NCBI GenBank assembly: GCA_950097015.1
Contig: CATNEN010000003.1
Location: forward strand, 15,500,001 to 15,564,000
Reading direction: 5' to 3'
Origin: Macrostomum hystrix
Taxonomy: Eukaryota; Animalia; Platyhelminthes
DNA length: 64,000 nt
Made by a program: the position numbers and the translations under genes. The notes beneath the pieces were generated by a model that searched no databases, had not been told where the DNA came from, and saw only the letters and a list, made by a program, of their open reading frames with translations. Of this stretch, positions 7,211 to 24,622 are shown piece after piece. Within the stretch, counting starts at the first letter, position 1. Every line of letters begins with the position of its first letter.

Positions 7211-7937
7211 TACTAGATTCAAAACTAAGGATCAGAAACCTAGATTATGCTAATCCTAATTATCGATCTTAGAATCGAAATCCATGTTTAGGTAAATTCC
7301 AATTACCAAGTTAGGGATCAGAATCCTAACATCAGGAATAATCCTACTTAACAGAATCGAGTTGTTGATATTTAAAGGGATAAAGGGATTATTAATACTA
7401 ATATTTTCGTTTATATAGAAGTATTATCAACACCTAGATATGCAAGACAATGTACAGAGATGAAATTGTTTGAGAAGTGTACATTCAGTAGTTCAACTAA
7501 TGCCTGTGATGGAGTCTAATTGCGATTTTTTTTATTACACAGTAAAGTAATTACAGAATCGATTAATATTATTATCCCAGTACTAACAATTGACAAGCCT
7601 CATTGCTGAATTGTCATATTTTGAGTCTGAAGCAAACGATATTATACAATTGAGCATGTGAAGAATTAAAAATAAATAGAAATCATATTTATTGTGCTTT
7701 GGCTGCATGTAGACGGAATACTTAAACGTTATTAGAACAAAAAGTACAGACAGGAGACGTACAAATTATAATGGGATTCGGGAATGCAAGCCTAATACTT
7801 AAGGCGTTAACATTTTTTCATTCCGGCCGGCATTATTAATTAGCCGACTATAAACCAAGAAAAATAATTACGTGACTTAGCTGCCTAAATATGACATTTG
7901 TACTGTCTCAAGGTAAGTCATTATTAATATATTATTA

Positions 7938-10900
7938 TTAAGCAGTGGTTGCTTGCGGAAGCGCCGCAGAGGAAGAGGTAGCAACAGCAGCTGCTGCTGC
8001 TGACGATGCTGTTGAATTAGACGGAGTGGAGTTCTCGTCAAGCAGAACTTCACTGAGCGGTCGTTGGCGCCTTTTAGTTGCAATGCGGTCAGTTGCGGTA
8101 ATGGCAGATCGCTGCTGCTGCTGCTGTTGCTGGGCGGTGAAAGACATTTTAGACATTGCACTGACAGTGGTTGGACTGTTTGCACAGCTAGCCACTATTG
8201 AAGCAGCGGAGGCGGCCGTCAGACAGAATCTTTTCTGACGCTTCGCTTCTGAGCAGGATGAGTCTGAGTCCTCTGCTGTTGATGCCGAAGACTCCGATTG
8301 CTGCTTTTGCTGCTGAAGTTGGCGTTCGAATTCCAAAAGTTGTCCAAGAAAATTGAAATTCGGACTAATACTAGGCCGGCGAGCTTTAACGTAGCTAAAA
8401 ACAGAAGAAGTTACTTTGTTAGGTTGCACATTTTGAATTAGCCTTTTTAAAAATGCATATCGCTTATAAAAATAAAATTCCGCTCACCGATAAGCCTCAT
8501 CTTGAGTCATATTGAGATGCTGCATAATGTATGCAATCACCATGGTTGGAGAGCGAGACACGCCAGCAAGGCAGTGTACAAGGCAGCGACCGTTGCTACG
8601 CCGGACATTGTCTAAAAGTAAGAGAACGAAGTTATAAATTATTTTTTCGATACATATAGGCTTTTTTAATATTGCCAAAAAACTATTTTTCGATACATAT
8701 AGGCTAAATAAAATGTACATTTTCGGTGCCTATAGCCTAGAAAAACGTTTTTCAGGTAAAACGAACACTTACCAAGAAACTGGAAAGCCAGTTTGAAATG
8801 CGGCAACAATTTGTCGGCGTAGCCGTCGTTAACTGGAACGCGCATGAAATTAGCCTCGTCGACGTGTTCAGACTGGGGACAATTGGCGCTCACATTCAAT
8901 ATGTGGGTAATGCCGTGACGCCGGATCACATCTGAGTCGCAGGCGTCAGTTTGAGAGCCGACGTAGACAAAACTTAATAGTTCAGTCGGTCCCTGATTCG
9001 TGGCGTAGTTTGGCTCGACTAGAAACTGTCGCTGCTGCTGCTGCTGACAACACGGGCCGACGCCATCGACACTATCAGCTCCAGCTCGGACAGCCGGGCA
9101 TCTGGACTCGCAGTACTGCGGATAGGCCGCGGCGAAGTGGGCGAAACCTCCTGAAACGATGTTGCGGTTCGTCGGATTTGTAGCTGACTCGGCTAGGAGA
9201 GCCTCCTGAGCGCATGTCACTACTGTGGCTGCTGCCACATTCGAAGATAGGCAACAGTTATGCTGATGAAATGTTAGCTTCTCTGGTCGAAATTTTCTGC
9301 ACAGCACCATGCCTTTTGAAAATCTCGTAGCTATTCTCTCGGGAAAAAAAACTTATAATGTTCAAACGCAAGCTAGCAAGAGTTCGCTGTTGCTGTGCAG
9401 AATTGATATGCTTATTCACCATACAGAGGAGAGGGCTTTATATAATTCATTGAGTGAAGGTATAGAAAAAGGACGATCTAAAAATAGCATATGACTAGAG
9501 CTGACACTCGTCTATTTTTAGAATTGGACAAATGCACATTTGGGGGATTGGATAGACTTTAAGCGCTCCGCCTCAAAACCCTCCGCTCACGCACACGTAG
9601 CGTGCGTGCTTGTCCCCACACTTTTCCAGCACCCGGTTTTTCTATCCAGTTCTCCAGTTCTAGCCCAGCCAACCCAACCCTACAGTGAGTCACACAAACA
9701 TTTCTTTCTCGATAATTCTAGCAAGCTTCCAGAAAAATGTACCTAGCAGAAAGCGCTAACAGAAGGGCGGGGTGGAGGGAATCCTCACTAAGATCGTTGC
9801 TTCTCTTGCTTGAAATAGAGCGAATGACGAAGGGAAAAGTTATGGTAAGAACTAACGATTGGTCACGGGATGAGATGGGGATTACTAAAAATAGACTGTA
9901 AACCGTATGGTTGCTAAGGTGTCATAAAAACAGGGGGGAAATACCCCCTCTTCCCCACTGTAAGAAAAACGGTTCGTGCTTGGTGGAGTTTTCCTGTTTC
10001 AACCGATACGAGACGAAGTGGTGCAGCATGCACGTACCACGTACAATCTGGCCTGAGGCTACATAAGTCATTAAAATCCTACTTTAGTGTAAAGGGAAAA
10101 TGGAATTCCATGTGAAACTCACAAATATTGATGCCCGACTGTACCCTAAGTATAGAAATGTCTTATCAGTACATGACTGCAACAGAAATATCCTTATTTG
10201 TCTACTTCTACATATACAGCTTTATGAAGTGTTGACTGAACTCCCTAAATAGACGACAGATCAACAGAAAACTATTTACTTTAAGAAGATGAGAAGCACT
10301 AAGAAATATTAGTTAAATAAAAGTTCAGATACAAAATGTCGAAAGAATGCGAATAAATATAACTTATCTTGCGTCACTAGTATTAGATAGAAGAAAAAGG
10401 ACAGACTGCTAATAGCGCGTTGAGGTTGAGAAGGAGAAAAAAGAAAACGTGATCATTACTATGAAACAATGTTTGAGGGCTCTTAAGTCTTAACATACAA
10501 CGTCAGGCCATCTCAGTTAAACTATGATGATAAAAAAGCAAATTTATTAAATTAAATACAAAGACATAAAAAAGACTGGAAATGCAACACCTATTGACTA
10601 TTGTCAAGGATTTACGGTGAAAATTAAATATTTAAACAAATCTATCTAGTCAAGGATTAGTGCTAATTACTTAATTTCACGTGACTTCCACAGAAAAGAC
10701 AGGACCGCAGTAAATAAATTAGTCACAGGGTGCTTAAACAGTGCAGTATTTTAAACAAAAAGTATTTAACCAATTATCTGTGAAATCAGCTTGATTTATT
10801 TATTTATTTATTGAAGGTATATTTTTAAAGACCCTCGACTAAGGTGGCCGGCCATCGGCCAAACACTTATAGGTGTGTAGCGCAACGCGTGAATATTAAC

Positions 10901-13900
10901 TAATCATGATTAAATATTTATAAGACCCTCGGGTGAATGATAAGGCCAAAGTCTATATCGTTCGGTATTAAAAATAGATAAGTGTTATGACTGAAATAGC
11001 TAGCAAGCTATAGATAGCTAAAATATGAAGGCAACGATTTTTATAAAAATTCACTGGATACTGCGATAAGAGAAAGGTTAGCTGCAATAGTTTTAATCTA
11101 GACGAAGTTCTGTTTGTTCCTTCACTATTGACTCCAAAATTAGCCCCGAAAAAATGCTGAAAAAAAAGAATTTAAATTAGCTTGTGCTTACCAATCGAGC
11201 GCACTTTTCTATTATTTCTGTTATTATTATTTATCATAGGCCTATTAAAGTTGCTTAGCGTACAATTTGGCGACAACGGACTCAATGGACTATTTTGGCT
11301 GACAAGTGGGGGGCGATTTGGTTGGGTTCGCCTCAAATTCAACAAGCTAGGCCTAGTAGTCGTTGTAGTGCCAACAGTAGCAGCAGCTGCAGCAGTAGAT
11401 ACGTCAGAATTTTCAGCGCGACTTTGTTGACGATGTCTAGCAATCGGTGACGTTGACGTAGGCATTTCTCTCTCAACTTATTGATGATAAATCGTGTGAG
11501 TTAAAAAAATTGGCTGCGAAGCTTGTGAGAGAGGGATCGAGTGAGTAACAAGGATTGTTAATTGTTTGTGCGCCTATAGACAGGACAGGCAAGCTGGACA
11601 AGGAAGGGGAAAGGCCGAAGTGCTGACTAAACAGGCGGGGTACGGCTGGGGGAGGGCCAGACAGGGAAGGAAAGCAGAGCGAACGAGAAACACCCGCCCC
11701 AGTCCGGGAACCAATAGGAAACCGCAAAAAATTCCTTAACATTGCAAGCGCGGGCAAGTCCCCAGAATAGGGGAGTCGGACTCAGTCACAAGCGTACGGT
11801 GACTAATTTGACGCTCTATAATCGTTTTAATCATTTTATGAATTATGTTAAAAATTCATAATCGTCGTAAAGTCAAATAAAAATTCCACTTAACACTAAC
11901 ATAAACTACTAGAAGACAAATTCTATCATAAATCCAAACAAATCGAAAGACACTTGCGGTTTCATAGAAACACTTCACTATAAATAAAAAACTTGAATCA
12001 CAAAAATTTTCTTTTAATTAACAGGCAGTAAATATCAAGGATTCGACGAGGTAATGACTGATTTAAAGACAGGACAGGATTGGATGGGGTAATGACTGAT
12101 TCAAAGACAGGGCAGGATCGGATGGGGTAATGACTGATTCAAAGACAGGACAGGATTGGATGGGGTAATGACTGATTCAAAGACAGGACAGGATTGGATG
12201 GGGTAATGACTGATTCAAAGACAGGACAGGATCGGATGGGGTAATGACTGATTCAAAGACAGGACAGGATTGGATGGGGTAATGACTGATTTAAAGACAG
12301 GACAGGATTGGATGGGGTAATGACTGATTCAAAGACAGGGCATGATCGGATGGGGTAATGACTGATTCAAAGACAGGACAGGATTGGATGGGGTAATGAC
12401 TGATTCAAAGACAGGACAGGATCGGATGGGGTAATGACTGATTCAAAGACAGGGCATGATCGGATGGGGTAATGACTGATTCAAAGACAGGACAGGATTG
12501 GATGGGGTAATGACTGATTCAAAGACAGGACAGGATTGGATGGGGTAATGACTGATTCAAAGACAGGACAGGATTGGATGGGGTAATGACTGATTCAAAG
12601 ACAGGAAGGATTGGATGGGGTAATGACTGATTCAAAGACAGGACAGGATTGGATGGGGTAATGACTGATTCAAATACAGGACAGGATTGGATGGGGTAAT
12701 GACTGATTCAAAGACAGGACAGGATTGGATGGGGTAATGACTGATTCAAAGACAGGACAGGACAGGATTCGTGAAGACGTTAAATCAAGCATTTTCTGAA
12801 CGCACCTTGCAGCAGGCGTACAGTGGAGTACTTGGCAGCTAGTCGGTTCATGAGCAGTTGAACAAAGTCGGCATTGTCGCTAGCTGTGACTCCACCATAG
12901 TCGGCTCCTTGGAGTACACTGGATTGAATCTCAGCTGGCATCAGGGGTTGAGTGTCGGAGCTTCGATCGTAGAGAACAACGCAGTAGGAATCTGAATTGG
13001 CCAATGGCACTGCTGTACTAGTTGGGGCGGCAGAAGCTGCGGCGGCCGCAGCGACTGTGAATGCCGATTTTGATCGCTGATCGTTGGGAAGCAGATCGTT
13101 GATTGATAGCTGGAGTAGATAGGGATAATGGATGATTTGTTAGGGATATATCGAATCGGAATAATAATAAATCAGTGATTATTTATCCATATTAGGTGAT
13201 CTTGGTGAAGTGAGAGATCTGAGAGAATGGTAGGTTGATACTGAGGATCTGGGAGAATGGTAGGTTGATCCAGAAGATCTGGGAGAATCCTAGGTTGATC
13301 CAGAGGATCTGGGAGAATCGTAGGTTGATCCTGAGGATCTGGGAGAATGGTAGGTTGATCCAGAGGATCTGGGAGAATGGTAGGTTGATCCAGAGGATCT
13401 GGGAGAATCGTAGGTTGATCCTGAGGATCTGGGAGAATGGTAGGTCGATCCAGAGGATCTGGGAGAATGGTGGGTTGATCCATGGAGGATCTGGGAGAAT
13501 GGTAGGTTGATCCAGAGGATCTGGGAGAATCGTAGGTTGATCCTGAGGATCTGGGAGAATGGTAGGTTGATCCAGAGGATCTGGGAGAATTGTAGGTTGA
13601 TCCTGAGGATCTGGGAGAATGGTAGGTTGATCCAGAGGATCTAGGAGAATGGTAGGTTGATCCAGAGGATCTGGGAGAATTGTAGGCTGATCCTGAGGAT
13701 CTGGGAGAATCGTAGGTTGATCCAGAGGATCTGGGAGAATCGTAGGTTGATACTGAGGATCTGGGAGAATGGTGGGTTGATCCAGAGGATCTGGGAGAAT
13801 GGTAGTTTGATCCTGAGGATCTGGGAGAATTGTGGGTTGATCCAGAGGATCTGGGAGAATCGTAGGTTGATCCTGAGGATCTGGGAGAATGGTGGGTTGA

Positions 13901-16900
13901 TCCAGAGGATCTGGGAGAATGGTAGGTTGATCCAGAGGATCTGGGAGAATGGTAGTTTGATCCTGAGGATCTGGGAGAATGGTAGGTTGATCCAGAGAAT
14001 CTGGGAGAATGGTAGGTTGATCCAGAGGATCTGGGAGAATGGTAGGTTGATCCAGAGGATCTGGGAGAATGGTAGGTTGATCCAGAGGATCTAGGAGAAT
14101 TGTAGGCTGATCCTGAGGATCTGGGAGAATCGTAGGTTGATCCTGAGGATCTGGGAGAATGTTGGTTCAAGAATATGAAATAATTGTGATTTGAGGAACT
14201 GGAAGAACTGGAAGGTGGATAGAGGACGAGGGAGAATGGCCGCTGCGTCCTGAAGATTCGGTAGAATGGTCATTTAAGGATCTGGGAGAATGGTTTACCT
14301 AATTTTGAGGACCTGATAAGAAAATTGCTTAATTCTCAGGATGCTGAAGAAGGGGGGCTTAAAAATTATCTCAGATTATATGGGCACAGCCATTCAAGCT
14401 TCAAATTGTGGTTGAGCTTGAAGAAAAAACATAATAAGCCTTTGAATCCTTAAAATTAATTGAGGAGTCGAAAAACTAATTGACACACTTTATGTTTTCA
14501 TGTTTTTTAGTGTGGTGTTTCACGCAATAATTTTTCCTCGATACACTACTTAGCTATGGGAAGGCATTTAAGTAGTTCAATGCGGGCAACGCACTATGAA
14601 ATAAATAGCGGAGAGCTTAAGGCTAAAGAAATATATAGAGGCTTAGGTGAGAAGGCTGGCGGGTGGGGTGGTAAGTGGGGTGGTAAGCAACAGCAGCAGC
14701 AGCAGACAGTCACATTAGAAAAAACTAGTTCAGAAGCATAAATTAATGCACTGAATAATAGCTGGCAACTCAAAGCGGAGGAGGCAAGGATTCTATATAT
14801 GGTGTTTTTCAGGGGGAGATATTTTTCCCTGCCTACGCGCGCGAGTTGCTTCAGGGACCGGAGACAAGGGGGCGTGGGCACAAGGCGGGTGCATGGAAAC
14901 ATAGCCTATAGGTGATTAGTCGCTAGCCTTCATCAAATGAATGAAACCTAATCCCATGGTTCATGCAAATAGCATGCAGCCTGCTAAAAATGGAAAGAGA
15001 TTTGCACGACTTTAAATTCGAAAATCAATTGTCTCGAAGCACGGAGGAGAAGTCGATCTAATTACAAGCTGCAGTGACCTGATGAGTTGTCAATATAACA
15101 AATTCGATAAGTATTGGCCAGATCGACAGTATACCCATTGACTTGTTGAGGTCAAAGAAAATTCAATGACTCAATGATAAGGTGCATTGATTGAGCAGGT
15201 AAACAAAACAACTCACTATACTGAAGGGCACTTGTTTAAGGCATTCTTATCCAGCCAACACTGAATGAGGTTAAAGTTTAAACGAAACACGTACCAAATA
15301 AGGCTAAGGTAAGATAGGTTCATATTTTCAATTTGAAATTCATTTTTATCTTTCAGTCACGCCACTAAAAGCCAACAAATTGCTGACTCGTAATTTTGTA
15401 AATACTTAAAGACCATTAAATGGCGCTCTGTTCGTTAATAGATCATTTCCCTGAGTGTGAAGAGTTGGTGCCTTACAAGAAAAAACAACATTGAGAGTGT
15501 GAAAGTAACAGAAAATATCTATCAAGTCTTTCATGTGCACTGATTTTTATAAACCGTTTTCAACAGTTTGTGAAATCCAAAAAGGCTAACCTTGTATCGT
15601 AGGTTGCATACTGTACAATAATTGCATTGCATTCTAATGCGAGATTAATATTGCAAAGCGAACCAATTTGGTAATATAAAAATGACGTCATTTCTATTTT
15701 TAGATACAGCTAACTAAATACATGCCGGACAAAATGCAATTAACTCTTTTGTTTAAACTGTCTCTTACTAACTATGACCTGTACTGAATATATGCGCATG
15801 CAGTAATCCATATGTGATCTTTGTCTAACGTTTAGTAACACAGACATCAGAGAATGAGTTTTAGAGGATATGTAGGGCTATAATAGTAAAGAACTAGCAG
15901 TCTGCTGAAATGTATACAGACGATATTGAATCAATTATGTATATCAATATCCTAGACAAATACGAGACGGTAGGTTGATCATGAGAATCTGGAAAATGGT
16001 GGCAACATCCTGAGGATCTGAGAGAATGATGCTTTGAGAATATGGAAGAACTTTTTATTTGAGGAACTGGGCGAACGGTGGCTAGAGGATGTGGGAGTAT
16101 GGTTGCTTCGCGAATAGTCGTGCCATAAATAATAATAATAATAATTGCAGGAGGGCTGCGGGCAATGACACATCATTTGGTGACACTAGACCCGCAGTCA
16201 GCGAGGAGGTGATTCTGCAGATTTCGCTGACTCCTTTGCGATACTGTACACAGAGGTGTGTACATCTGCCCTGACTTTCTCATTGTCTGGCAGTGTACAC
16301 TTCACTGTAACTTGGAGGTTGGTCCTCAAGAGTTAAGGGCGTATATTGTACGACAAGCCCCCATGCCTTCTCTCCGCGGCTGCGCCCAAATTAAATGTGG
16401 CCTCGCCGTGGAATCAAAACTGAGGGACCGCGGTGCGAGAGGCAAACGCGTTAAACGCTCTGCCACCGACCCCCATAGTCGTGCCATAGACAGGAAGAGA
16501 ATAGTCGTGCCATAGACAGGACGAATTAATGAATTCAAGGCAACTTTTCTTAACTAGAGCTCAATAGAAAAAATCTTTATTAACAACGCATATTATCTCA
16601 TTCTCTAAATGAACTATTTACTATGTATATATGAAGTGAGTCAGTTACTATCTTTGCAAACCCATTGTTGCGAGAAATTGCATCTGAAAAAAATATATAA
16701 ACTACTACCAAACTATAAATAAAATAGTGTTGACGCAAGAAATAAAGCTATTCACTTTCATTCCAACAGAATCTCAGTAAGACAGTACATTTCTATTATA
16801 GGCTAGTTTAAGAAGGCCGTGCTTCTCAAAAACAAAGCAATCTACACAAACTGGTTTGAACAGTGCAATTTATACATATAAACTTTCATCACACGATTAT

Positions 16901-18026
16901 CATTTCCAAATCTACCATGAAAATACCCAACACATAGCTTATTATAAAAAAATGACTGCAGACTTTTAGTACAGAACTAAATAAAGTCAGAACTGTGTGT
17001 CATAAACATAAAATGACAAAGACAGCAACAGTTAACCAACCTTTCCCTGCAGTAGGCGCCTTCGAACCAATCTGGAGCAGCACACGTTAACAGCTGTTCT
17101 GATGCAGCCCAAATTGAATTCCAATAGAGAGCGACTGTCTATGATTAGCAGCTGTGGGTGTTTTTAGGTTTTGGAGAAACTATGCTAAGGATTGCTTGTG
17201 AGACTGAGTATGTCAGGATTGCTGACATGGGGAGTCAGTCACGTCAGGATTGCTGACATGGGGAGTCAGTCATGTCAGGATTGCTGACATGGGGAGTCGG
17301 TCATGTCAGGATGGTTGACATGGGTAGTCAGTCACGTCAGGATGGCTGACATGGGGAGTCAGTCATGTCAGGATGGTTGACATGGGGAGTCAGTCATGTC
17401 AGGATGGCTGACATGGGGAGTCAGTCATGTCAGGATGTTTGACATAGGGTGTCAGTCATGTCAGGACGGTTGACATGGGGAGTCAGTCATGTCAGGATGG
17501 TTGACATGGGGAGTCAGTTATGTCAGGCTGGTTGACACGGGGGAGTCAGTCACATCAGGATGGCTGACATGGGGAGTCAGTCATGTCAGGATGTTTGACA
17601 TAGGGTGTCATTCATGTCAGGATGGTTGACATGGGGAGTCAGTCATGTCAAGATGGTTGACATGGGGAGTCAGTTATGTCAGGCTGGTTGACACGGGGGA
17701 GTCAGTCATTTCAGGATGGTTGACATGGAGAGTCAGTTATGTCAGGCTGGTTGACATGGGGGAGTCAGTCATTTCAGGATGGTTGACGTGGGGAGTCAGT
17801 CATGTCAAGATGGTTGACACAGGGGAGTCAGTCATGTCAGGATGTTTGTTTTGTATACTTACCTTAGATGAAATAAGTATGAAAGTATGTATGAAGTATG
17901 TATGAAGTATGTATGAAGTATGTATGAAGTATGAAGTAAGTATGAAATACTTACCTTTGATGGATTAAAAGCTAGTAGCTTCACCAGGCTAGCTGGTGAA
18001 ATCAGCAAGGCTTGCTGTTGATCACC
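7938..18026 (-). CDS. Dual-specificity MAP kinase phosphatase, DUSP8/DUSP16 (MKP-7) type; start codon not located
   Basis: Phase-consistent GT-AG exons 18026-17955, 17151-17041, 13109-12806, 9150-8773, 8611-8488, 8394-7938. Rhodanese domain [37 protein letters not shown] with KIM arginines; catalytic D-loop VPVNDGY; signature [12 protein letters not shown]; [15 protein letters not shown]. Confidence 0.92.
9151..9310 (-). CDS. Putative alternative N-terminal extension (internal start) of the DUSP, contiguous with exon 9150-8773
   Basis: ATG at 9310 opens an unbroken frame ([14 protein letters not shown]...NIVS) into [11 protein letters not shown]; TATA and AP-1 elements lie just upstream. Confidence 0.6.
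9400..9870 (-). promoter_or_regulatory. Putative intronic promoter of a short DUSP isoform
   Basis: TATATAAA on the minus strand at 9437-9444, Inr-like TCAATT ~9401-9406, perfect AP-1 site TGAGTCA 9686-9692, GC box GGGCGGGG ~9765, CCAAT boxes ~9548 and ~9858. Confidence 0.55.
11192..11465 (-). CDS. Putative alternative first coding exon of the DUSP
   Basis: ATG 11465, 274 nt (91 codons +1) ending at a strong donor G|GTAAGC; phase 1 matches the acceptor at 9150; poly-Ala/Thr/Asn tracts like other exons here; GC-rich upstream region with GC box and CCAAT (11580-11810). Confidence 0.65.
12050..12770. repeat. Intronic minisatellite, 38-bp unit GATGGGGTAATGACTGATTCAAAGACAGGACAGGATTG
   Basis: About 19 tandem units. 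Confidence 0.97.
13210..14165. repeat. Intronic minisatellite, 30-bp unit GAGGATCTGGGAGAATGGTAGGTTGATCCA
   Basis: About 32 units; explains the ([10 protein letters not shown])n ORF. Confidence 0.97.
16128..16474 (-). mobile_element. tRNA-derived SINE family B, full-length with TSD
   Basis: Reverse complement starts GGGGGTCGGTGGCAGAGCG, has a degenerate B-box, ends GCAGCCCTCCTGCA+(ATT)n; 14-bp TSD ATAGTCGTGCCATA at 16114-16127 and 16475-16488; homologous copies at 30596 and 45039. Confidence 0.88.
17210..17845. repeat. Intronic minisatellite, ~31-bp unit GTCAGGATGGTTGACATGGGGAGTCAGTCAT
   Basis: About 20 tandem units. Confidence 0.95.
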
Positions 18027-19954: not shown

Positions 19955-22900
19955 ATGAATTTTGGACCATTGTATTTCTCTGGATCAGGAACAGGACAGA
20001 ATAAAACACTCATAAAAAGTGCACTTTATTGGCGTCTTCACAAAGGTATTACAAAATTTAAATATGTTCATTGAATATTTTTATTTTATTTCTATTTTGC
20101 TTCAGTTATCAAGCAAGACTTTATGACAATTAAATGATCCATTTAGTTAGCTTTTCACGTTTAAGTATTGTTTCCTAAAAGCATGGCTTAGTTATAGTAG
20201 TAAAGTAAAATGAACTAAGTAAATTTATCGTTGATGTGCAAGTATAATATATGCTTTGCTGTTGTGCTGCAAAAACATTTTCCTTAAATTTCTTCTTAAA
20301 ACCTGATTTGTCAAATAAAATAAGCTTTGAAAAAATCTCAGACAAATTGTTAAATATTTACAAATAAGGTATAAATAGAGGCACGAGTTTTATATTGCTT
20401 GAGCAATAGGGCATACTAAAAAAATTAGTATGCCCTTTTTGGCATGAAGCACTAAGAAGCTATAAAATACTTTTTTATTTAAACCATTCAAACCAAAACT
20501 TTCTTTTAGACTTGGAATGGACCATAGAGAAGCTATCGCTCGAAAAACAATTTCCTGTTCACAAAGGTTGTGTAAGTAAAATTTAAATAGTAAAACACAA
20601 ATCATTTTTTACGAAATATGAAATGAAATTTTAGGTGAACTCATTGTGCTGGAACTCCACTGGGCAATATTTGTTATCTGGCTCTGATGATCGAAATCTG
20701 GTAATTTCTTCACCATTTAGTCCGAAGGTAAGCTAAATTGCATTGAATATCAAGTAAAAACTAAATTTTGAAAATGCAGCAATCTATGTTTAATTATTAC
20801 TCGTTCAATTAAAAACAATTAACAGCTATCACTGCCCACTATGCTGCTACACTTCTTATTTATATGCCTTTGATATTTCAAAGGTAAAGAAAAATTGAAG
20901 CAAAAATGCAAACATTTTAATATGATTTATTTTTTTGCTATCGTTTGCGCGCTAAGAATTGCACATAAATAGAAGATAACTAATATAAGAGTTAGTCAAG
21001 TTAATTGCCTTTTCAGGATATACTAAACTAAATTCATTAATAACTGGAACAAATTCTGTTATCACCTGACAGCAGACACCCACTTCACTTTAAAAACGCT
21101 ACTCGTAACTTTTTGGAACCCGCCCCACCCCACTCCACTCTTCAACACCCACCTCTCTCTGACACCCACCTCACTCTTCAACACCCACCTCTCTCTGACA
21201 CCCACCTCACTCTTCAACACCCACCTCTCTCTGACACCCACCTCACTCTTCAACACCCACCTCTCTCTGACACCCACCTCACTCTTCAACACCCGCCTCT
21301 CTCTGACACCCACCTCACTCTTCAACACCCGCCTCTCTCTGACACCCACCTCACTCTTCAAAACCCACCTCTCTCTGACACCCACCTCTCTCTGACACCC
21401 ACCTCTCTCTGACACCCACCTCACTCTTCAACACCCACCTCTCTCTGACACCCACCTCACTCTTCAACACCCACCTCTCTCTGACACCCACCTCACTCTT
21501 CAACACCCACCTCTCTCTGACACCCACCTCACTCTTCAACACCCACCTCACTCCACTTTACGAGCGGACATTGTTACAGAATTTTTTTGCCTTTTTTCTT
21601 GACAACGAGCTTTAATGAATCCCGCAGCTGGAGGCTTTGAAAATATTCTCTGGTCATCAGGCGAACATATTCAGCGCCAAATTTTTGCCACATTCTGGCG
21701 ACAAAAATATTATATCCGCTTCCGGCGATGGTAGAGTTAGCCTCGCCGATCTAGGCGTCGCTGCTGGCCTAGAAGGCTTCCGGACATTCGCCAGCCACCA
21801 TGGTGCAGTTTATGACCTCGTTACAAGCCGTTGGGATCCTGGCGTATTCTTCAGCGTCGGCAGCGATGGCACGATCAGACAGTTCGATGTTCGCCAGTCG
21901 CATTGTAGCAGTTCGCTGCTGCTTAACAATCAGAATATGAGGTTTCTGTATCGCGTGCATTTTGCATACATTATCTGCGCAACTTTCCCCAATGTCCTTC
22001 AATCGATTTTCAACAAATTATGATTAAAGCTTTCGACTTCTAGCCAAGAGGTCCGGAGTTCGAATCTTGCTAGTATGTCCCAGTGGCTGCTCATAAGGCC
22101 AGATTGGGTTAAGTTTAATTTATATTTATCTAGATGTTTGCATCAACAATATGCATCATGAATTTTACTCCCATTTTTTTGTCGAGTGATAATTTTAAAC
22201 AGTAATCAGTTTTATACAATATTAAAAATTTATATCCACAGATAAGGGGTTAAAGGCGTCGTACTCGCGACTTAAAGGTCGAGGGTTCGATTCCCGGACT
22301 GCCAGACTTTAGCAGGACACTTAACTCAGTATCGCTCCAGTTCACCCAGCTGTTAAATTGGCACATTTAAACACAAAATATTGAACCTCCATTAGCAGTC
22401 AATCTGGCTTCACTGCGGCAGCGCTCCATCCGTCTGGCTCGGGTCGTCGAATGTTTGTCTCCGATTGCAACGGTTGCATTCTAGAGTTCGATCGACGATT
22501 CCTGCCACCAAGTCAAATTGACTGGGCCAACAACACCGCTTGTTTGAGTCTAACTGAGCCGCCTAGAAGTGACATCTCAGCCTCATCGGTTGGTGCGAAT
22601 GTTGCTAATCGAGTTAGCAGTTTGGAATTTGACCAGCTTGGGGAGAGACTACTGGCCTCCTATTCCTGTGGCAGGATTTGCCTGTTCGATGTTAGCAGAC
22701 ATTTTGAAGACACTGCTTGTCAGCCAAATTTTACTCGCGGCTTAAACTGGTGAGTTCAAAACTAAATCCTCAAGATATCCTCGCGACACAGAATCCTCAA
22801 GATATCCTCTCGACACAGAATCCTCAAGATATCCCCTCGACACAGAATCCTCAAGATATCCTCTCGACACAGAATCCTGAAGATATCCTCGCGACACAGA

Positions 22901-24622
22901 ATCCTCAAGATATCCTCGCGACACAGAATCCTCAAGATATCCCCTCGACACAGAATCCTCAAGATATCCTCGCGACACAGAATCCTCAAGATATCCTCGC
23001 GACACAGAATCCTCAAGATATCCTCGCGACACAGAATCCTCAAGATATCCTCGCGACACAGAATCCTCAAGATTTCCTCGCGACACAGAATCCTCAAGAT
23101 TTCCTCGCGACACAGAATCCTCAAGATATCCTCTCGACACAGAATCCTGAAGATATCCTCGCGACACAGAATCCTCAAGATATCCTCGCGACACAGAATC
23201 CTCAAGATATCCTCGCGACACAGAATCCTCAAGTTATCCTCGCGACACAGAATCCTCAAGATATCCTCTCGACACAGAATCCTGAAGATATCCTCGCGAC
23301 ACAGAATCCTCAAGATATCCTCGCGACACAGAATCCTCAAGATTTCCTCTCGACACAGAATCCTGAAGATATCCTCGCGACACTTTTTTACTTTTACTTA
23401 ATTGCAGGGGGGCCTGGGGCACTTGACGCACAAGCGCAGGAACGGCATGCCCCCAGGCCGGCGAACTAGGCGGGAGTCGCCCATCGCGCCATCTAGACCC
23501 CTGAACACAGGCACCTCATACACAGCCGCAAGCCAAGCGGGGAAGGGGGCGGCTGCCGGAGTGCCTCTCACCCCAGGCCCGCACACGCACAGAGCCGACC
23601 AAACCAGGGGAGGACTTAGATGCCTGAAGGGTAGGGACGAGAGGACCAAGCCACGCGCGCAGACGGCTGGTGAAACCTCGCCGCTCAGAGCACGCATGGC
23701 TGGTGCACACCCGCCCCACCCCCATACAACGCCTCACACCCGGCCCAACGCACAAACACAAACACAAACAAGCAGGCATGCAGAAGGCAGGAGCGAAGCT
23801 ATTATTTCAAGCTTTAATTGCACGAAATATGGTGCACCTCCGCCGGTCGCTACTGTCCATACCCCCCCAACAAGTACCGAAATTAATCGTGACTTGAAGG
23901 GTGAATCGAACTAGCGTCCTTTGGAGTGCGAGGCAGCGACGTTAGCCGCTGACCCCACTCGCCCCTCCCTCGCGACACAGAATCCTCAAGATATCCTCGC
24001 GACACAGAATCCTCAAGTTATCCTCGCGACACAGAATCCTCAAGATATCCTCTCGACACAGAATCCTGAAGATATCCTCGCGACACAGAATCCTCAAGAT
24101 ATCCTCGCGACACAGAATCCTCATGAATTTCATAGGCAAAGTCGAGCCAATGTTGGCTACGCCCTGCTGGAGCAGTTTCGCGGTCATCGCAATTCTCGCA
24201 CCAGCATTCAGCAGGCCACATTCTGGGGCGTCAGTCACATTCTGTCTGGCAGCGACTGCGGTCACATCTTTGCTTGGCGCATCGGCAACTCCCCTTCCAC
24301 TGGCAGTCCTTGTCTAGCTCTTCAAGCTGATCGATGCTTAGTTAATCGCGTAGCTGCCAACCCGGAGCTTCTCTGCTTGGCCACTAGCGGAGTGGAACAC
24401 CTTGTGAAACTGTGGTCTCCGATGCAGCATTCCGAAACGGGTGAGTCCAACGAAGCCAGGCTAAGTCACAAGTCCAATGCCGCCATCTATGCTGAAGAAA
24501 TCGCCCGTCGCAATCAGGAGCTACTAGGCTATCCTACAGTCAATTTCACAATGGCTTCATTGAATCATTTTGCATTGCCGCCAGCTGCTGCTGTTGCTGC
24601 TGTTGCTGCTGCTGGTCTGTGA
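19955..24622 (+). CDS. DCAF6: DDB1- and CUL4-associated factor 6-like WD40 protein (compact form)
   Basis: Phase-consistent exons 19955-20045, 20510-20571, 20635-20727, 21628-21941, 22399-22749, 24136-24622. [55 protein letters not shown] and [13 protein letters not shown] match the N- and C-terminal WD blocks of DCAF6. Confidence 0.85.
21125..21555. repeat. Intronic minisatellite, 36-bp unit CTCTCTCTGACACCCACCTCACTCTTCAACACCCAC
   Basis: About 12 tandem units. Confidence 0.95.
22245..22362 (+). mobile_element. SINE family A, partial copy
   Basis: AAGGTCGAGGGTTCGATTCCCGG followed by CAGTTCACCCAGCTGTTAAATTGG. Confidence 0.7.
22765..24123. repeat. Intronic minisatellite, 27-bp unit AATCCTCAAGATATCCTCGCGACACAG, interrupted by a SINE at 23384-23967
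   Basis: About 23 units left and 6 units right of the insertion; fills nearly the whole last DCAF6 intron. Confidence 0.95.
23384..23967 (-). mobile_element. GC-rich tRNA-headed SINE family C (584 bp)
   Basis: Reverse complement starts GAGGGGCGAGTGGGGTCAGCGG (A-box-like), has GTTCGATTC (B-box), ends CCCCCCTGCAATTAAGTAAAAGTAAAAAA; flanked by an apparent 11-bp TSD CCTCGCGACAC (23373-23383, 23968-23978). Confidence 0.8.

What the first reader, a model, noticed from the sequence alone, without database searches (positions are those of the whole stretch)
8773..11810. MAPK phosphatase with swappable docking modules: two internal N-termini, each with a JIP1-type RPxxLx(L/F) motif
Seen: besides the rhodanese/KIM exons, the intron before the catalytic exon holds two ATG-initiated N-termini that join the catalytic domain in frame. 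One is exon 11465-11192 (phase-1 GTAAGC donor) encoding RPSLLNL plus SPLSPLSP; the other is the contiguous extension from ATG 9310 encoding [10 protein letters not shown]. Established: RPxxLxL is the JNK-binding D-motif of JIP1 (RPTTLNL), and SP sites are MAPK phosphoacceptors. Inference: one gene makes three phosphatases with different MAPK-targeting modules, the two short ones lacking rhodanese as Drosophila Puckered does.
Basis: partly seen in the sequence, partly recalled or inferred. Interest (0 to 1): 0.85.

Follow-up and report, generated by a model that had tools for sequence, protein, structure and literature searches.

The report
Flatworm JNK phosphatase with alternative N-termini
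A flatworm gene for a JNK/p38-type MAP-kinase phosphatase really does make three transcripts with different front ends, and the main one swaps the usual folded kinase-binding domain for a short conserved tail that matches a known JNK-docking motif, though binding is untested.

Summary
On the minus strand lies a DUSP8/DUSP16-type MAPK phosphatase gene of a macrostomid flatworm; the best named relative is Macrostomum lignano.

RNA contigs from two runs of one study show all three predicted forms:
- the rhodanese exon joined to 9150
- exon A joined 11192->9150
- transcripts running unspliced from about 9400 through ATG 9310 into the catalytic exon. This form has by far the highest contig depth, after a TATA box at 9436-9444.

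**Short form (ATG 9310, 372 aa).** It is conserved. Two orthologues and a rhodanese-less paralogue group all start MVLCRK-x-RP-x-x-L-x-F. The core positions of the JIP1-class JNK docking motif are invariant, the x positions vary, and the tail is predicted disordered.

**Exon A (410-aa form).** It is a minor transcript. Its frame is too long and too well phased for chance, but no homologue was found anywhere, so its RPSLLNL motif stands on one sequence.

**Precedent and limits.** Human MKP5/DUSP10 has a validated N-terminal JIP1-type motif. Rhodanese-less DUSP8/VHP-1 isoforms are annotated in vertebrates and nematodes. The M. lignano short form is already deposited as a hypothetical protein. 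This is therefore a new variant of a known kind. Docking to JNK is inferred, not tested.

The parts
17037..17151 (-). Rhodanese exon of the long form. It carries the kinase-interaction motif ([10 protein letters not shown]). The boundaries are inferred.
   Evidence: tblastn of rhodanese-bearing DUSP8/16 homologues gives 53-65% identity over 17154-17035. Translation. No RNA was laid here.
12806..13054 (-). Second rhodanese exon, ending in phase 1 with donor GT at 12805-12804. It joins to 9150 and gives LLQ-G-GFAHF.
   Evidence: Sequence. The loose end at 9152 in X3 and X4 is the reverse complement of this exon's 3' end. The 5' boundary is inferred.
11192..11594 (-). Exon A, an alternative first exon. 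The 5'UTR runs from about 11594 to 11466. The CDS is 11465-11192 (91 codons plus 1 base).
   Evidence: Contigs 11191-11583 (X3) and 11191-11594 (X4) are spliced to 9150, at depth about 8. The first ATG is open to the donor in phase 1, which only 0.1% of shuffles match at 60 or more codons. The region is single-copy in the genome.
11334..11354 (-). RPSLLNL, residues 38-44 of exon A. It matches the JIP1-class pattern.
   Evidence: shuffle P = 0.014. Conservation is unknown.
11268..11291 (-). SPLSPLSP cluster: three Ser-Pro sites about 20 residues after the motif.
   Evidence: One search lists SP at residues 59, 62 and 65.
9436..9444 (-). TATA box (TATATAAAG) of the internal promoter for the short form.
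   Evidence: Sequence. The contigs' 5' limits (9351, 9373, 9398) lie just downstream. Truncated genomic copies begin at about 9406-9412.
9478..9521 (.). Pair of MEF2-type sites CTA(A/T)4TAG, 34 bp apart. A third site lies at 9885-9894.
   Evidence: 6 in the window against 2.2 expected, with 3 of them here. The C7 paralogue has a pair 35 bp apart upstream of its ATG (3 against 0.06 expected).
9151..9410 (-). Short-form first-exon extension. The 5'UTR runs from about 9410 to 9311. ATG 9310 is followed by 53 codons unique to this form and is contiguous with the shared exon.
   Evidence: Contigs 9123-9373 (X3, depth 91), 9123-9351 (X4, depth 164) and 9123-9398 (X1). There is no upstream ATG in the supported 5'UTR.
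9269..9289 (-). RPEKLTF, residues 8-14 of the short form. It is the JIP1-class core inside the conserved 14-mer [14 protein letters not shown].
   Evidence: Invariant M V L C R K. R P.. L. F in P0001-P0005 and the own-genome C7 paralogue. Shuffle P = 0.004. The equivalent residues in the P0001 model are disordered.
8773..9150 (-). Shared exon: last rhodanese helix ([15 protein letters not shown]), linker, and first half of the DSPc domain.
   Evidence: Pfam DSPc. Joint 8611/8773.
8488..8611 (-). Shared exon with the catalytic loop HCLAGVSRS (8550-8576).
   Evidence: Pfam DSPc E = 2.5e-15. Joints 8394/8488 and 8611/8773.
7938..8394 (-). Last coding exon: end of DSPc, the FNFL segment (8346-8357), a Gln/Ala-rich tail, and stop TAA at 7940-7938.
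   Evidence: The FNFL of MKP7 is the JNK1-binding segment (PMC4802042).

Best explanation
This is a DUSP8/DUSP16 (MKP7/VHP-1)-type MAP-kinase phosphatase gene of a macrostomid flatworm, transcribed from three start regions.

The far upstream promoter gives the classical form with a rhodanese kinase-binding domain and KIM.

An internal TATA promoter at about 9440 gives the main product, a 372-aa rhodanese-less enzyme. Its disordered N-terminal tail begins [14 protein letters not shown].

A weaker start at or upstream of 11594 gives a 410-aa form. Its 91-residue N-terminus carries RPSLLNL followed by three Ser-Pro sites.

Proposed mechanism: in the short form, the catalytic domain's FNFL segment holds JNK at its F-site, as in human MKP7. 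The N-terminal R-P-x-x-L-x-F motif occupies JNK's D-groove, as the JIP1 motif and the N-terminal motif of human MKP5 do. Loss of the rhodanese domain removes the p38-binding surface. The short form would then be a JNK-biased phosphatase.

Shown here: the three transcript forms, the reading frames, the subfamily, the conservation of the 14-mer, and its predicted disorder.

Inferred: binding to JNK, loss of p38 binding, and any function for exon A.
For: Transcripts:
- Spliced contigs in X3 and X4 show the joints 8394/8488, 8611/8773 and 9150/11192.
- There are continuous contigs 9123-9373 and 9123-9351.
- The loose end at 9152 matches the rhodanese exon.
- Contig depths for the extension are 91 and 164, against 138 and 177 for the shared exon and about 8 for exon A. 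Intron depth upstream of 9400 is 0-7.
- X1, from another organism, also carries 9123-9398. Its only difference inside the extension ORF is synonymous.

Subfamily:
- The best solved relatives are the DUSP16 and DUSP8 catalytic domains, at about 170 bits. DUSP7, DUSP6 and DUSP10 score about 125-127 bits.
- The FNFL segment is present.

Conservation:
- P0001 is a 360-aa transcript-derived protein, 74% identical.
- M. lignano BOX15_Mlig006006g1 (P0002) starts [14 protein letters not shown].
- Paralogues P0003-5 and the own-genome C7 copy start MVLCRKNRPCGLKF.
- The sequence after residue 14 is not alignable.
- The C7 paralogue has no rhodanese exon within about 27 kb upstream. It sits among 14 AP-1 sites in 10 kb, against 1.55 expected.

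Disorder: residues 1-56 of the P0001 model have pLDDT below 50.

Precedent:
- MKP5/DUSP10 residues 18-24 are a validated JIP1-type motif that binds JNK, while its rhodanese domain binds p38 (PMC4670726).
- The MKP7 catalytic domain, not its rhodanese domain, binds JNK1 (PMC4802042).

Three JNK-like genes with the TPY loop exist in this genome.
Against:
- The whole 14-mer is invariant, including MVLC, which the JIP1 pattern does not explain. Another function could drive the conservation, such as lipidation at Cys4, a degradation signal, or a generic D-motif for p38 or ERK.
- Exon A has no detectable homologue, so its motif could be chance (P about 0.014), and its transcript is minor.
- Contig depths are a poor measure of abundance.
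- All strong RNA evidence comes from one study.
- No capped 5' ends were seen, so the start sites are inferred from contig limits and a TATA box.
Confidence: 0.6

Rival explanations
1. The short form is real and conserved, but its N-terminal 14-mer is not a JNK docking motif. It would serve another purpose: membrane or compartment targeting through Cys4 next to basic residues, a stability signal, or a general basic-hydrophobic D-motif that replaces the lost KIM for p38 or ERK.
For: - MVLC is as invariant as the RP..L.F core.
- The string also fits the loose generic D-motif consensus quoted in PMC4670726.
- MKP7's catalytic domain alone already binds JNK1, so an extra JNK motif is not strictly needed.
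Against: - The positions that vary between paralogues are exactly the x positions of the JIP1 class.
- Arg, Pro, Leu and Phe never vary.
- The subfamily is JNK/p38-specific.
- MKP5 sets a direct precedent.
Confidence: 0.25
2. Exon A is a young, weak, lineage-specific alternative start with no selected function, and its RPSLLNL and Ser-Pro run are chance features of a low-complexity peptide. Only the long and the ATG-9310 forms would matter.
For: - Depth is about 8, against 134-177 for the shared exons.
- No homologue was found among 1.84 billion representatives.
- None was found among proteins of 50-159 aa.
- There is no other copy in the genome.
- None of the Macrostomum proteins retrieved starts this way.
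- Motif shuffle P is only 0.014.
Against: - The first ATG of the transcribed exon stays open for 91 codons to a donor in the correct phase, which 0.1% of shuffles match.
- The splice is seen in two runs.
- A D-motif about 20 residues upstream of Ser-Pro sites is the usual layout of JNK substrates (general knowledge, not tested here).
Confidence: 0.55
3. The reads across 9151-9400 are retained intron or unspliced pre-mRNA of the long form, not a separate transcript.
For: Contigs cannot show 5' ends, and low-depth contigs (2-5) do lie further up the intron in X3.
Against: - Depth of 91-164 stops within 100 bases upstream of the ATG, while the rest of the intron is at 0-7.
- A TATA box sits about 30 bases upstream of the contig limit.
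- Full-length orthologous transcripts start with this very ATG.
- A paralogue has only this form.
Confidence: 0.04

Closest known systems
Human DUSP10/MKP5 N-terminal JIP1-type D-motif (residues 18-24; Zeke et al. 2015, PMC4670726)
   Same: Both are JNK/p38-class MAPK phosphatases. Both carry a JIP1-class linear motif close to the N-terminus, in a disordered stretch, and separate from the rhodanese domain. In MKP5 the motif binds JNK and the rhodanese domain binds p38.
   Different: MKP5 carries the motif and the rhodanese domain in one protein. Here the motif-bearing forms lack the rhodanese domain and arise from internal promoters. The catalytic domain is nearer to DUSP8/16 than to DUSP10. 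Binding is untested here.
Human DUSP16/MKP7 and DUSP8; C. elegans VHP-1
   Same: These are the best sequence matches for the catalytic domain, with the FNFL segment that binds JNK1 in structure 4yr8. The long form has the same rhodanese domain plus KIM layout. Rhodanese-less isoforms that start just before the GGF exon are also annotated in vertebrate DUSP8 ('isoform X2') and in nematode VHP-1-like genes.
   Different: Those short isoforms have other N-termini (for example MPLDVVIAP...MRLKIRVRR in vertebrates) with no JIP1-class match. The flatworm proteins lack the long MKP7 C-terminal region.
JIP1 D-motif (RPKRPTTLNLF)
   Same: Both motifs here have Arg-Pro, two free residues, Leu, one free residue, then Leu or Phe. 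These are the four positions mutated in the JIP1 control of Zeke et al.. Basic residues precede the core in both.
   Different: JIP1 is a scaffold, not a phosphatase. No structural or binding data exist for the flatworm peptides.
Drosophila Puckered
   Same: It is a JNK-directed dual-specificity phosphatase in an AP-1 feedback loop. The C7 paralogue here sits in a dense AP-1 site cluster.
   Different: A review calls Puckered the MKP5 orthologue (PMC10487481). The claim that it lacks a rhodanese domain could not be checked in the papers held.

Membership tests
MAPK phosphatase, DUSP8/DUSP16 (JNK/p38-specific) subfamily | DSPc catalytic domain with the HCxxGxxRS loop | tested here: met
   Pfam PF00782 on all three catalytic exons and on orthologue P0001 at 7.5e-41. 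HCLAGVSRS is encoded at 8550-8576.
MAPK phosphatase, DUSP8/DUSP16 (JNK/p38-specific) subfamily | Closer to DUSP8/16 than to other MKP subfamilies | tested here: met
   DUSP16 scores 169.9 bits and DUSP8 169.3 bits, against 127 or less for DUSP7, DUSP6 and DUSP10. No tree was built.
MAPK phosphatase, DUSP8/DUSP16 (JNK/p38-specific) subfamily | N-terminal rhodanese (kinase-binding) domain with a basic KIM | tested here: met
   Met for the long form only. The exon at 17151-17037 carries [10 protein letters not shown] and matches rhodanese-bearing homologues. The exon ending at 12806 is joined to 9150 in RNA. Pfam did not score the second exon on its own. The two short forms lack the domain.
MAPK phosphatase, DUSP8/DUSP16 (JNK/p38-specific) subfamily | FNFL (FXF-type) segment in the catalytic domain | tested here: met
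   [14 protein letters not shown] is encoded at about 8330-8365. The motif is defined in PMC4802042.
JIP1-class MAPK D-motif | Pattern [RK]-P-x-x-L-x-[LIVMF]. The exact regular expression is in a figure of PMC4670726 that is not held, so the pattern is used here as recalled. It is consistent with the JIP1 R160/P161/L164/L166 mutant in that paper. | tested here: met
   RPEKLTF and RPSLLNL both match. The paralogue's RPCGLKF matches too.
JIP1-class MAPK D-motif | Lies in an intrinsically disordered, accessible segment | tested here: met
   Met for the short form: pLDDT is 36-45 over residues 1-40 of the P0001 model, with no secondary structure. Not tested for exon A.
JIP1-class MAPK D-motif | Core positions conserved among relatives while neighbours drift | tested here: met
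   Met for ATG-9310: R8, P9, L12 and F14 are invariant in 7 sequences from two paralogue groups. Exon A is inconclusive because no relatives were found.
JIP1-class MAPK D-motif | Binds the D-groove of JNK | not testable with these tools
   The JNK genes of this genome are split over several exons.

The most novel reading that the evidence does not exclude
In macrostomid flatworms the folded rhodanese kinase-binding domain of a DUSP8/16 phosphatase has been functionally replaced by short linear JIP1-class motifs supplied by alternative first exons. One gene would then issue a p38/JNK form, a dominant JNK-dedicated form, and a third form that is both docked and phosphorylated by JNK through RPSLLNL plus its Ser-Pro sites. 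A duplicate gene that kept only the motif form would have become the AP-1-driven feedback phosphatase.
Probability: 0.25. Interest if true: 0.65.

Novelty: new variant of a known kind. Interest (0 to 1): 0.5.

Why it matters
How MAPK phosphatases choose among JNK, p38 and ERK is usually ascribed to the rhodanese domain. For JNK, however, the known contacts are the catalytic-domain FNFL segment and, in MKP5, a linear JIP1-type motif.

Here a natural gene offers the same catalytic domain with or without the rhodanese domain. A conserved linear motif takes its place, and a paralogue has kept only the motif form.

If the motif binds JNK, this is a clean natural example of a folded docking domain traded for a short linear motif through promoter choice. 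The system is also testable, because Macrostomum allows RNAi and transgenesis and its regeneration involves stress-kinase signalling.

If the motif does not bind JNK, the finding reduces to an ordinary alternative-promoter gene with a conserved N-terminal tag of unknown role.

Tried and rejected
**Searches for exon A relatives**
- The exon A peptide against 1.84 billion cluster representatives gave 0 hits.
- Against proteins of 50-159 aa it gave none.
- Against the own genome it gave only itself, at both protein and DNA level.
- These blanks have little power, because no congener genome was reachable.

**Tools and steps not available**
The contigs behind P0001 and the M. lignano gene could not be fetched, and exon A could not be sought there.
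- Complex prediction was not sent. The three JNK-like genes of this genome are each split over several exons.
- Exons were handled one by one by reference, and the complete orthologue P0001 stood in for the whole protein.
- The first pattern for JNK was too long for the tool and was shortened.

**Limits of the read laying**
The rhodanese-to-9150 joint is therefore seen only as a loose end.
- The joints 8003-8015/9026-9031 have short sides of 20-22 letters between two CAG-repeat tracts. I read them as assembly chimeras, not splicing.

**Ideas that did not hold**
- AP-1 sites as evidence for a feedback promoter in this window: not enriched, 5 against 8.8 expected.
- Extended promoter similarity between this gene and the C7 paralogue: none beyond the paired MEF2-type sites.
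- The Puckered domain layout could not be verified. PMC316530 is not held, and the other papers are silent on it.


Full report
**What is in the sequence**

The stretch lies inside a minus-strand gene. Its shared 3' part has three exons:
- 9150-8773
- 8611-8488
- 8394-7938, with the stop TAA at 7940-7938

These exons encode the last helix of a rhodanese domain ([15 protein letters not shown]), a linker, and a complete dual-specificity phosphatase domain. The domain has the loop HCLAGVSRS and the segment FNFL.

Upstream lie two rhodanese exons:
- 13054-12806 has a phase-1 donor.
- About 17151-17037 carries the basic kinase-interaction motif [10 protein letters not shown].
- A still earlier start exon was not located.

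- Exon A runs from ATG 11465 to 11192 (274 nt, phase 1, donor GT at 11191-11190).
- ATG 9310 reads without interruption through the acceptor at 9152-9151 into the shared exon.

**Are they expressed?**

One search for sequencing runs returned six holders. I laid four of them on 7310-12030.

Runs X3 and X4 come from the same study. Their contigs match the window without differences, and they are RNA in all but label:
- They hold spliced contigs across 8394/8488 and 8611/8773 at depth 134-177.
- The introns are at 0-7.

The same runs show all three predicted forms:
- A joint 9150/11192 with GT..AG ends. The contigs reach 11583 and 11594 at depth about 8.
- Unbroken contigs 9123-9373 (depth 91) and 9123-9351 (depth 164) across the acceptor.
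- A 255-letter loose end at 9152 that is the reverse complement of the end of the rhodanese exon.

So all three forms exist as RNA. By unitig depth, which is a rough guide only, the ATG-9310 form makes up most of the message. Exon A makes up about 5%.

Run X1, from a roughly 99%-identical organism, also has a contig 9123-9398. Its one difference inside the extension ORF (9215) is synonymous.

**Start of the short form**

- Coverage stops at 9351-9398.
- A TATA box (TATATAAAG, 9444-9436) lies about 30-40 bases upstream of that limit.
- There is no ATG between the limit and 9310.
- Truncated genomic copies of this gene on contigs C5 and C2 begin to resemble it at about 9406-9412.
- Two MEF2-type sites CTA(A/T)4TAG, 34 bp apart, sit at 9478-9521, with a third at 9885-9894.
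- The C7 paralogue has a pair 35 bp apart upstream of its own start. Three sites occur in that 10 kb, against 0.06 expected.

These points indicate a true internal promoter. No capped end was seen.

**What kind of phosphatase, and whose**

- A transcript-derived protein, P0001 (360 aa), is 74% identical over the first coding exon of the short form.
- With P0001 as proxy, the nearest solved structures are the catalytic domains of DUSP16/MKP7 and DUSP8, at about 170 bits. DUSP7, DUSP6 and DUSP10 score about 125-127 bits.
- The nearest named protein is Macrostomum lignano BOX15_Mlig006006g1, P0002.
- The genome is 220 Mb in 42 contigs.
- I take the organism for a macrostomid flatworm and the gene for a DUSP8/16/VHP-1-type, JNK/p38-class MKP.

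**Conservation of the short form**

- P0001 and P0002 start [14 protein letters not shown]. The window has [14 protein letters not shown].
- A second paralogue group starts MVLCRKNRPCGLKF. It comprises P0003-P0005 (one of them annotated in M. lignano) and a copy on contig C7 of this genome.
- Across all seven sequences the pattern M-V-L-C-R-K-x-R-P-x-x-L-x-F is invariant.
- The four x positions vary, and the next 20 or so residues cannot be aligned.
- In the AlphaFold model of P0001, residues 1-56 have pLDDT below 50 and no secondary structure. The catalytic domain is above 90.
- The C7 paralogue has no rhodanese exon within about 27 kb upstream, so there the motif form is the only form.
- A third paralogue on C37 has the ordinary acceptor and no such N-terminus.

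**The docking-motif claim**

R-P-x-x-L-x-(L/F) is the JIP1 class of JNK-binding D-motifs. The four positions correspond to the JIP1 R160/P161/L164/L166 mutant used by Zeke et al. (PMC4670726).

That paper validates a JIP1-type motif at residues 18-24 of human MKP5/DUSP10. It states that in MKP5 the rhodanese domain binds p38 and the linear motif binds JNK.

Liu et al. (PMC4802042) show that the MKP7 catalytic domain binds JNK1 through FNFL. Its rhodanese domain does not.

The mechanism I propose for the short form is built from these parts. FNFL sits on the F-site and the N-terminal motif sits in the D-groove. No rhodanese domain means no p38 surface.

Supporting this, the conservation pattern fits, the subfamily fits, and three JNK-like genes exist in the genome. 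Residue shuffles give the pattern in 0.4% of extension peptides.

Against it, MVLC is equally invariant and unexplained, and nothing here measures binding. I put the JNK-docking reading of this motif at roughly 55-60%.

**Exon A**

The transcribed exon (11594-11192) has its first ATG at 11465. It stays open for 91 codons to a donor in the phase that the next exon needs. Only 0.1% of shuffles do as well at 60 or more codons, so it is probably coding.

It holds RPSLLNL (shuffle P = 0.014). Three Ser-Pro sites follow about 20 residues later.

Against a selected function:
- The transcript is minor.
- The exon is single-copy.
- No homologue turned up in any search.
- None of the Macrostomum proteins retrieved begins this way.

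These blanks are weak. I put a functional docking role for exon A at about 25-30%.

**How new is it?**

- Rhodanese-less isoforms that start just before the GGF exon are annotated in many vertebrate DUSP8 genes and in nematode VHP-1-like genes. The vertebrate ones are labelled 'isoform X2' and start MPLDVVIAP...MRLKIRVRR.
- The M. lignano short form is already in the databases as a hypothetical protein.
- A JIP1-type motif at the N-terminus of a JNK/p38 MKP is published for MKP5.

New here is the combination:
- a DUSP8/16-type gene whose dominant product has the linear motif in place of the rhodanese domain
- conservation of that motif across a gene duplication
- a second, different motif-bearing first exon in the same gene

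I found no paper on this in Macrostomum. I class it as a new variant of a known kind, of moderate interest.

**Limits**

- The joined isoform proteins were neither searched nor folded. Exons were used one by one by reference.
- No complex prediction was sent, because JNK is split over several exons.
- The strong RNA evidence rests on one study.
- Depths come from contigs.
- The claim about Puckered's domain layout is unverified.

Noticed in passing
L015 (G000:C7:11427000-11436999). The gene is on the minus strand, with its ATG at L015 2475.: This rhodanese-less paralogue (MVLCRKNRPCGLKF...) sits among 14 AP-1 sites TGA(C/G)TCA in 10 kb, against 1.55 expected; none of 200 shuffles reached 14. 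It looks like a JNK/AP-1 feedback phosphatase.
   Followed up: partly
window 9478-9487, 9512-9521 and 9885-9894; L015 2801-2810 and 2836-2845: Paired MEF2-type sites CTA(A/T)4TAG with the same 34-35 bp spacing lie upstream of the short-form start in both paralogues. There is no other promoter similarity. This hints at muscle or neuron expression.
   Followed up: partly
G000:C5:1679927-1684475 (tandem) and C5:1723259-1726730; C2:8130827-8131938 and C2:8180728-8181839; C1:11965614-11965829 (loci L011-L014): Many truncated, intron-bearing copies of this gene exist, 81-95% identical. They start at about window 9406-9412, the inferred transcription start. A 31-nt deletion has removed the start codon. 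Some lie beside an endonuclease-like ORF of non-LTR retrotransposon type. They look like pseudogene fragments spread by a mobile element.
   Followed up: partly
Proteins P0003-5, P0010, P0011, P0013, P0014, P0017, P0018, P0020, P0028-30, P0040, P0056 (alignment A4, columns 544 and 608): Many protostome DUSP8/16 orthologues (nematodes, mites, the Macrostomum paralogue) carry a second RP-x-x-(L/V)-x-(L/F/I) match 85-135 residues after the catalytic Cys. It falls in only two alignment columns. The window gene has RPLSEVL at that place, which does not fit the pattern.
   Followed up: partly
Proteins P0052, P0068-P0117 (vertebrate 'DUSP8 isoform X2'): Fishes, lungfish, coelacanth, birds and lizards share a conserved alternative N-terminus MPLDVVIAP...MRLKIRVRR. 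It replaces most of the rhodanese domain and joins at the same GGF exon. The internal promoter at this intron may be ancient in the family.
   Followed up: no
window 12038-12762, 13216-14161, 17210-17848, 21129-21553, 22765-23383: The introns of the long form are packed with minisatellites of 27-38 bp units, 12-31 copies each, at 88-96% identity.
   Followed up: no
window 8003-8015 and 9026-9031: Contigs in X3 and X4 join two CAG-repeat tracts, with sides of only 20-22 letters and foreign letters between them. These are most likely assembly chimeras at poly-Gln repeats, not splicing.
   Followed up: no
L019 (C24:1724017-1727051), L020 (C39:17350362-17353396), L021 (C3:8436493-8439527): There are three JNK-like genes with the activation-loop string MTPYVVTRYYR(A/S)PE. 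Each is split into several exons.
   Followed up: partly
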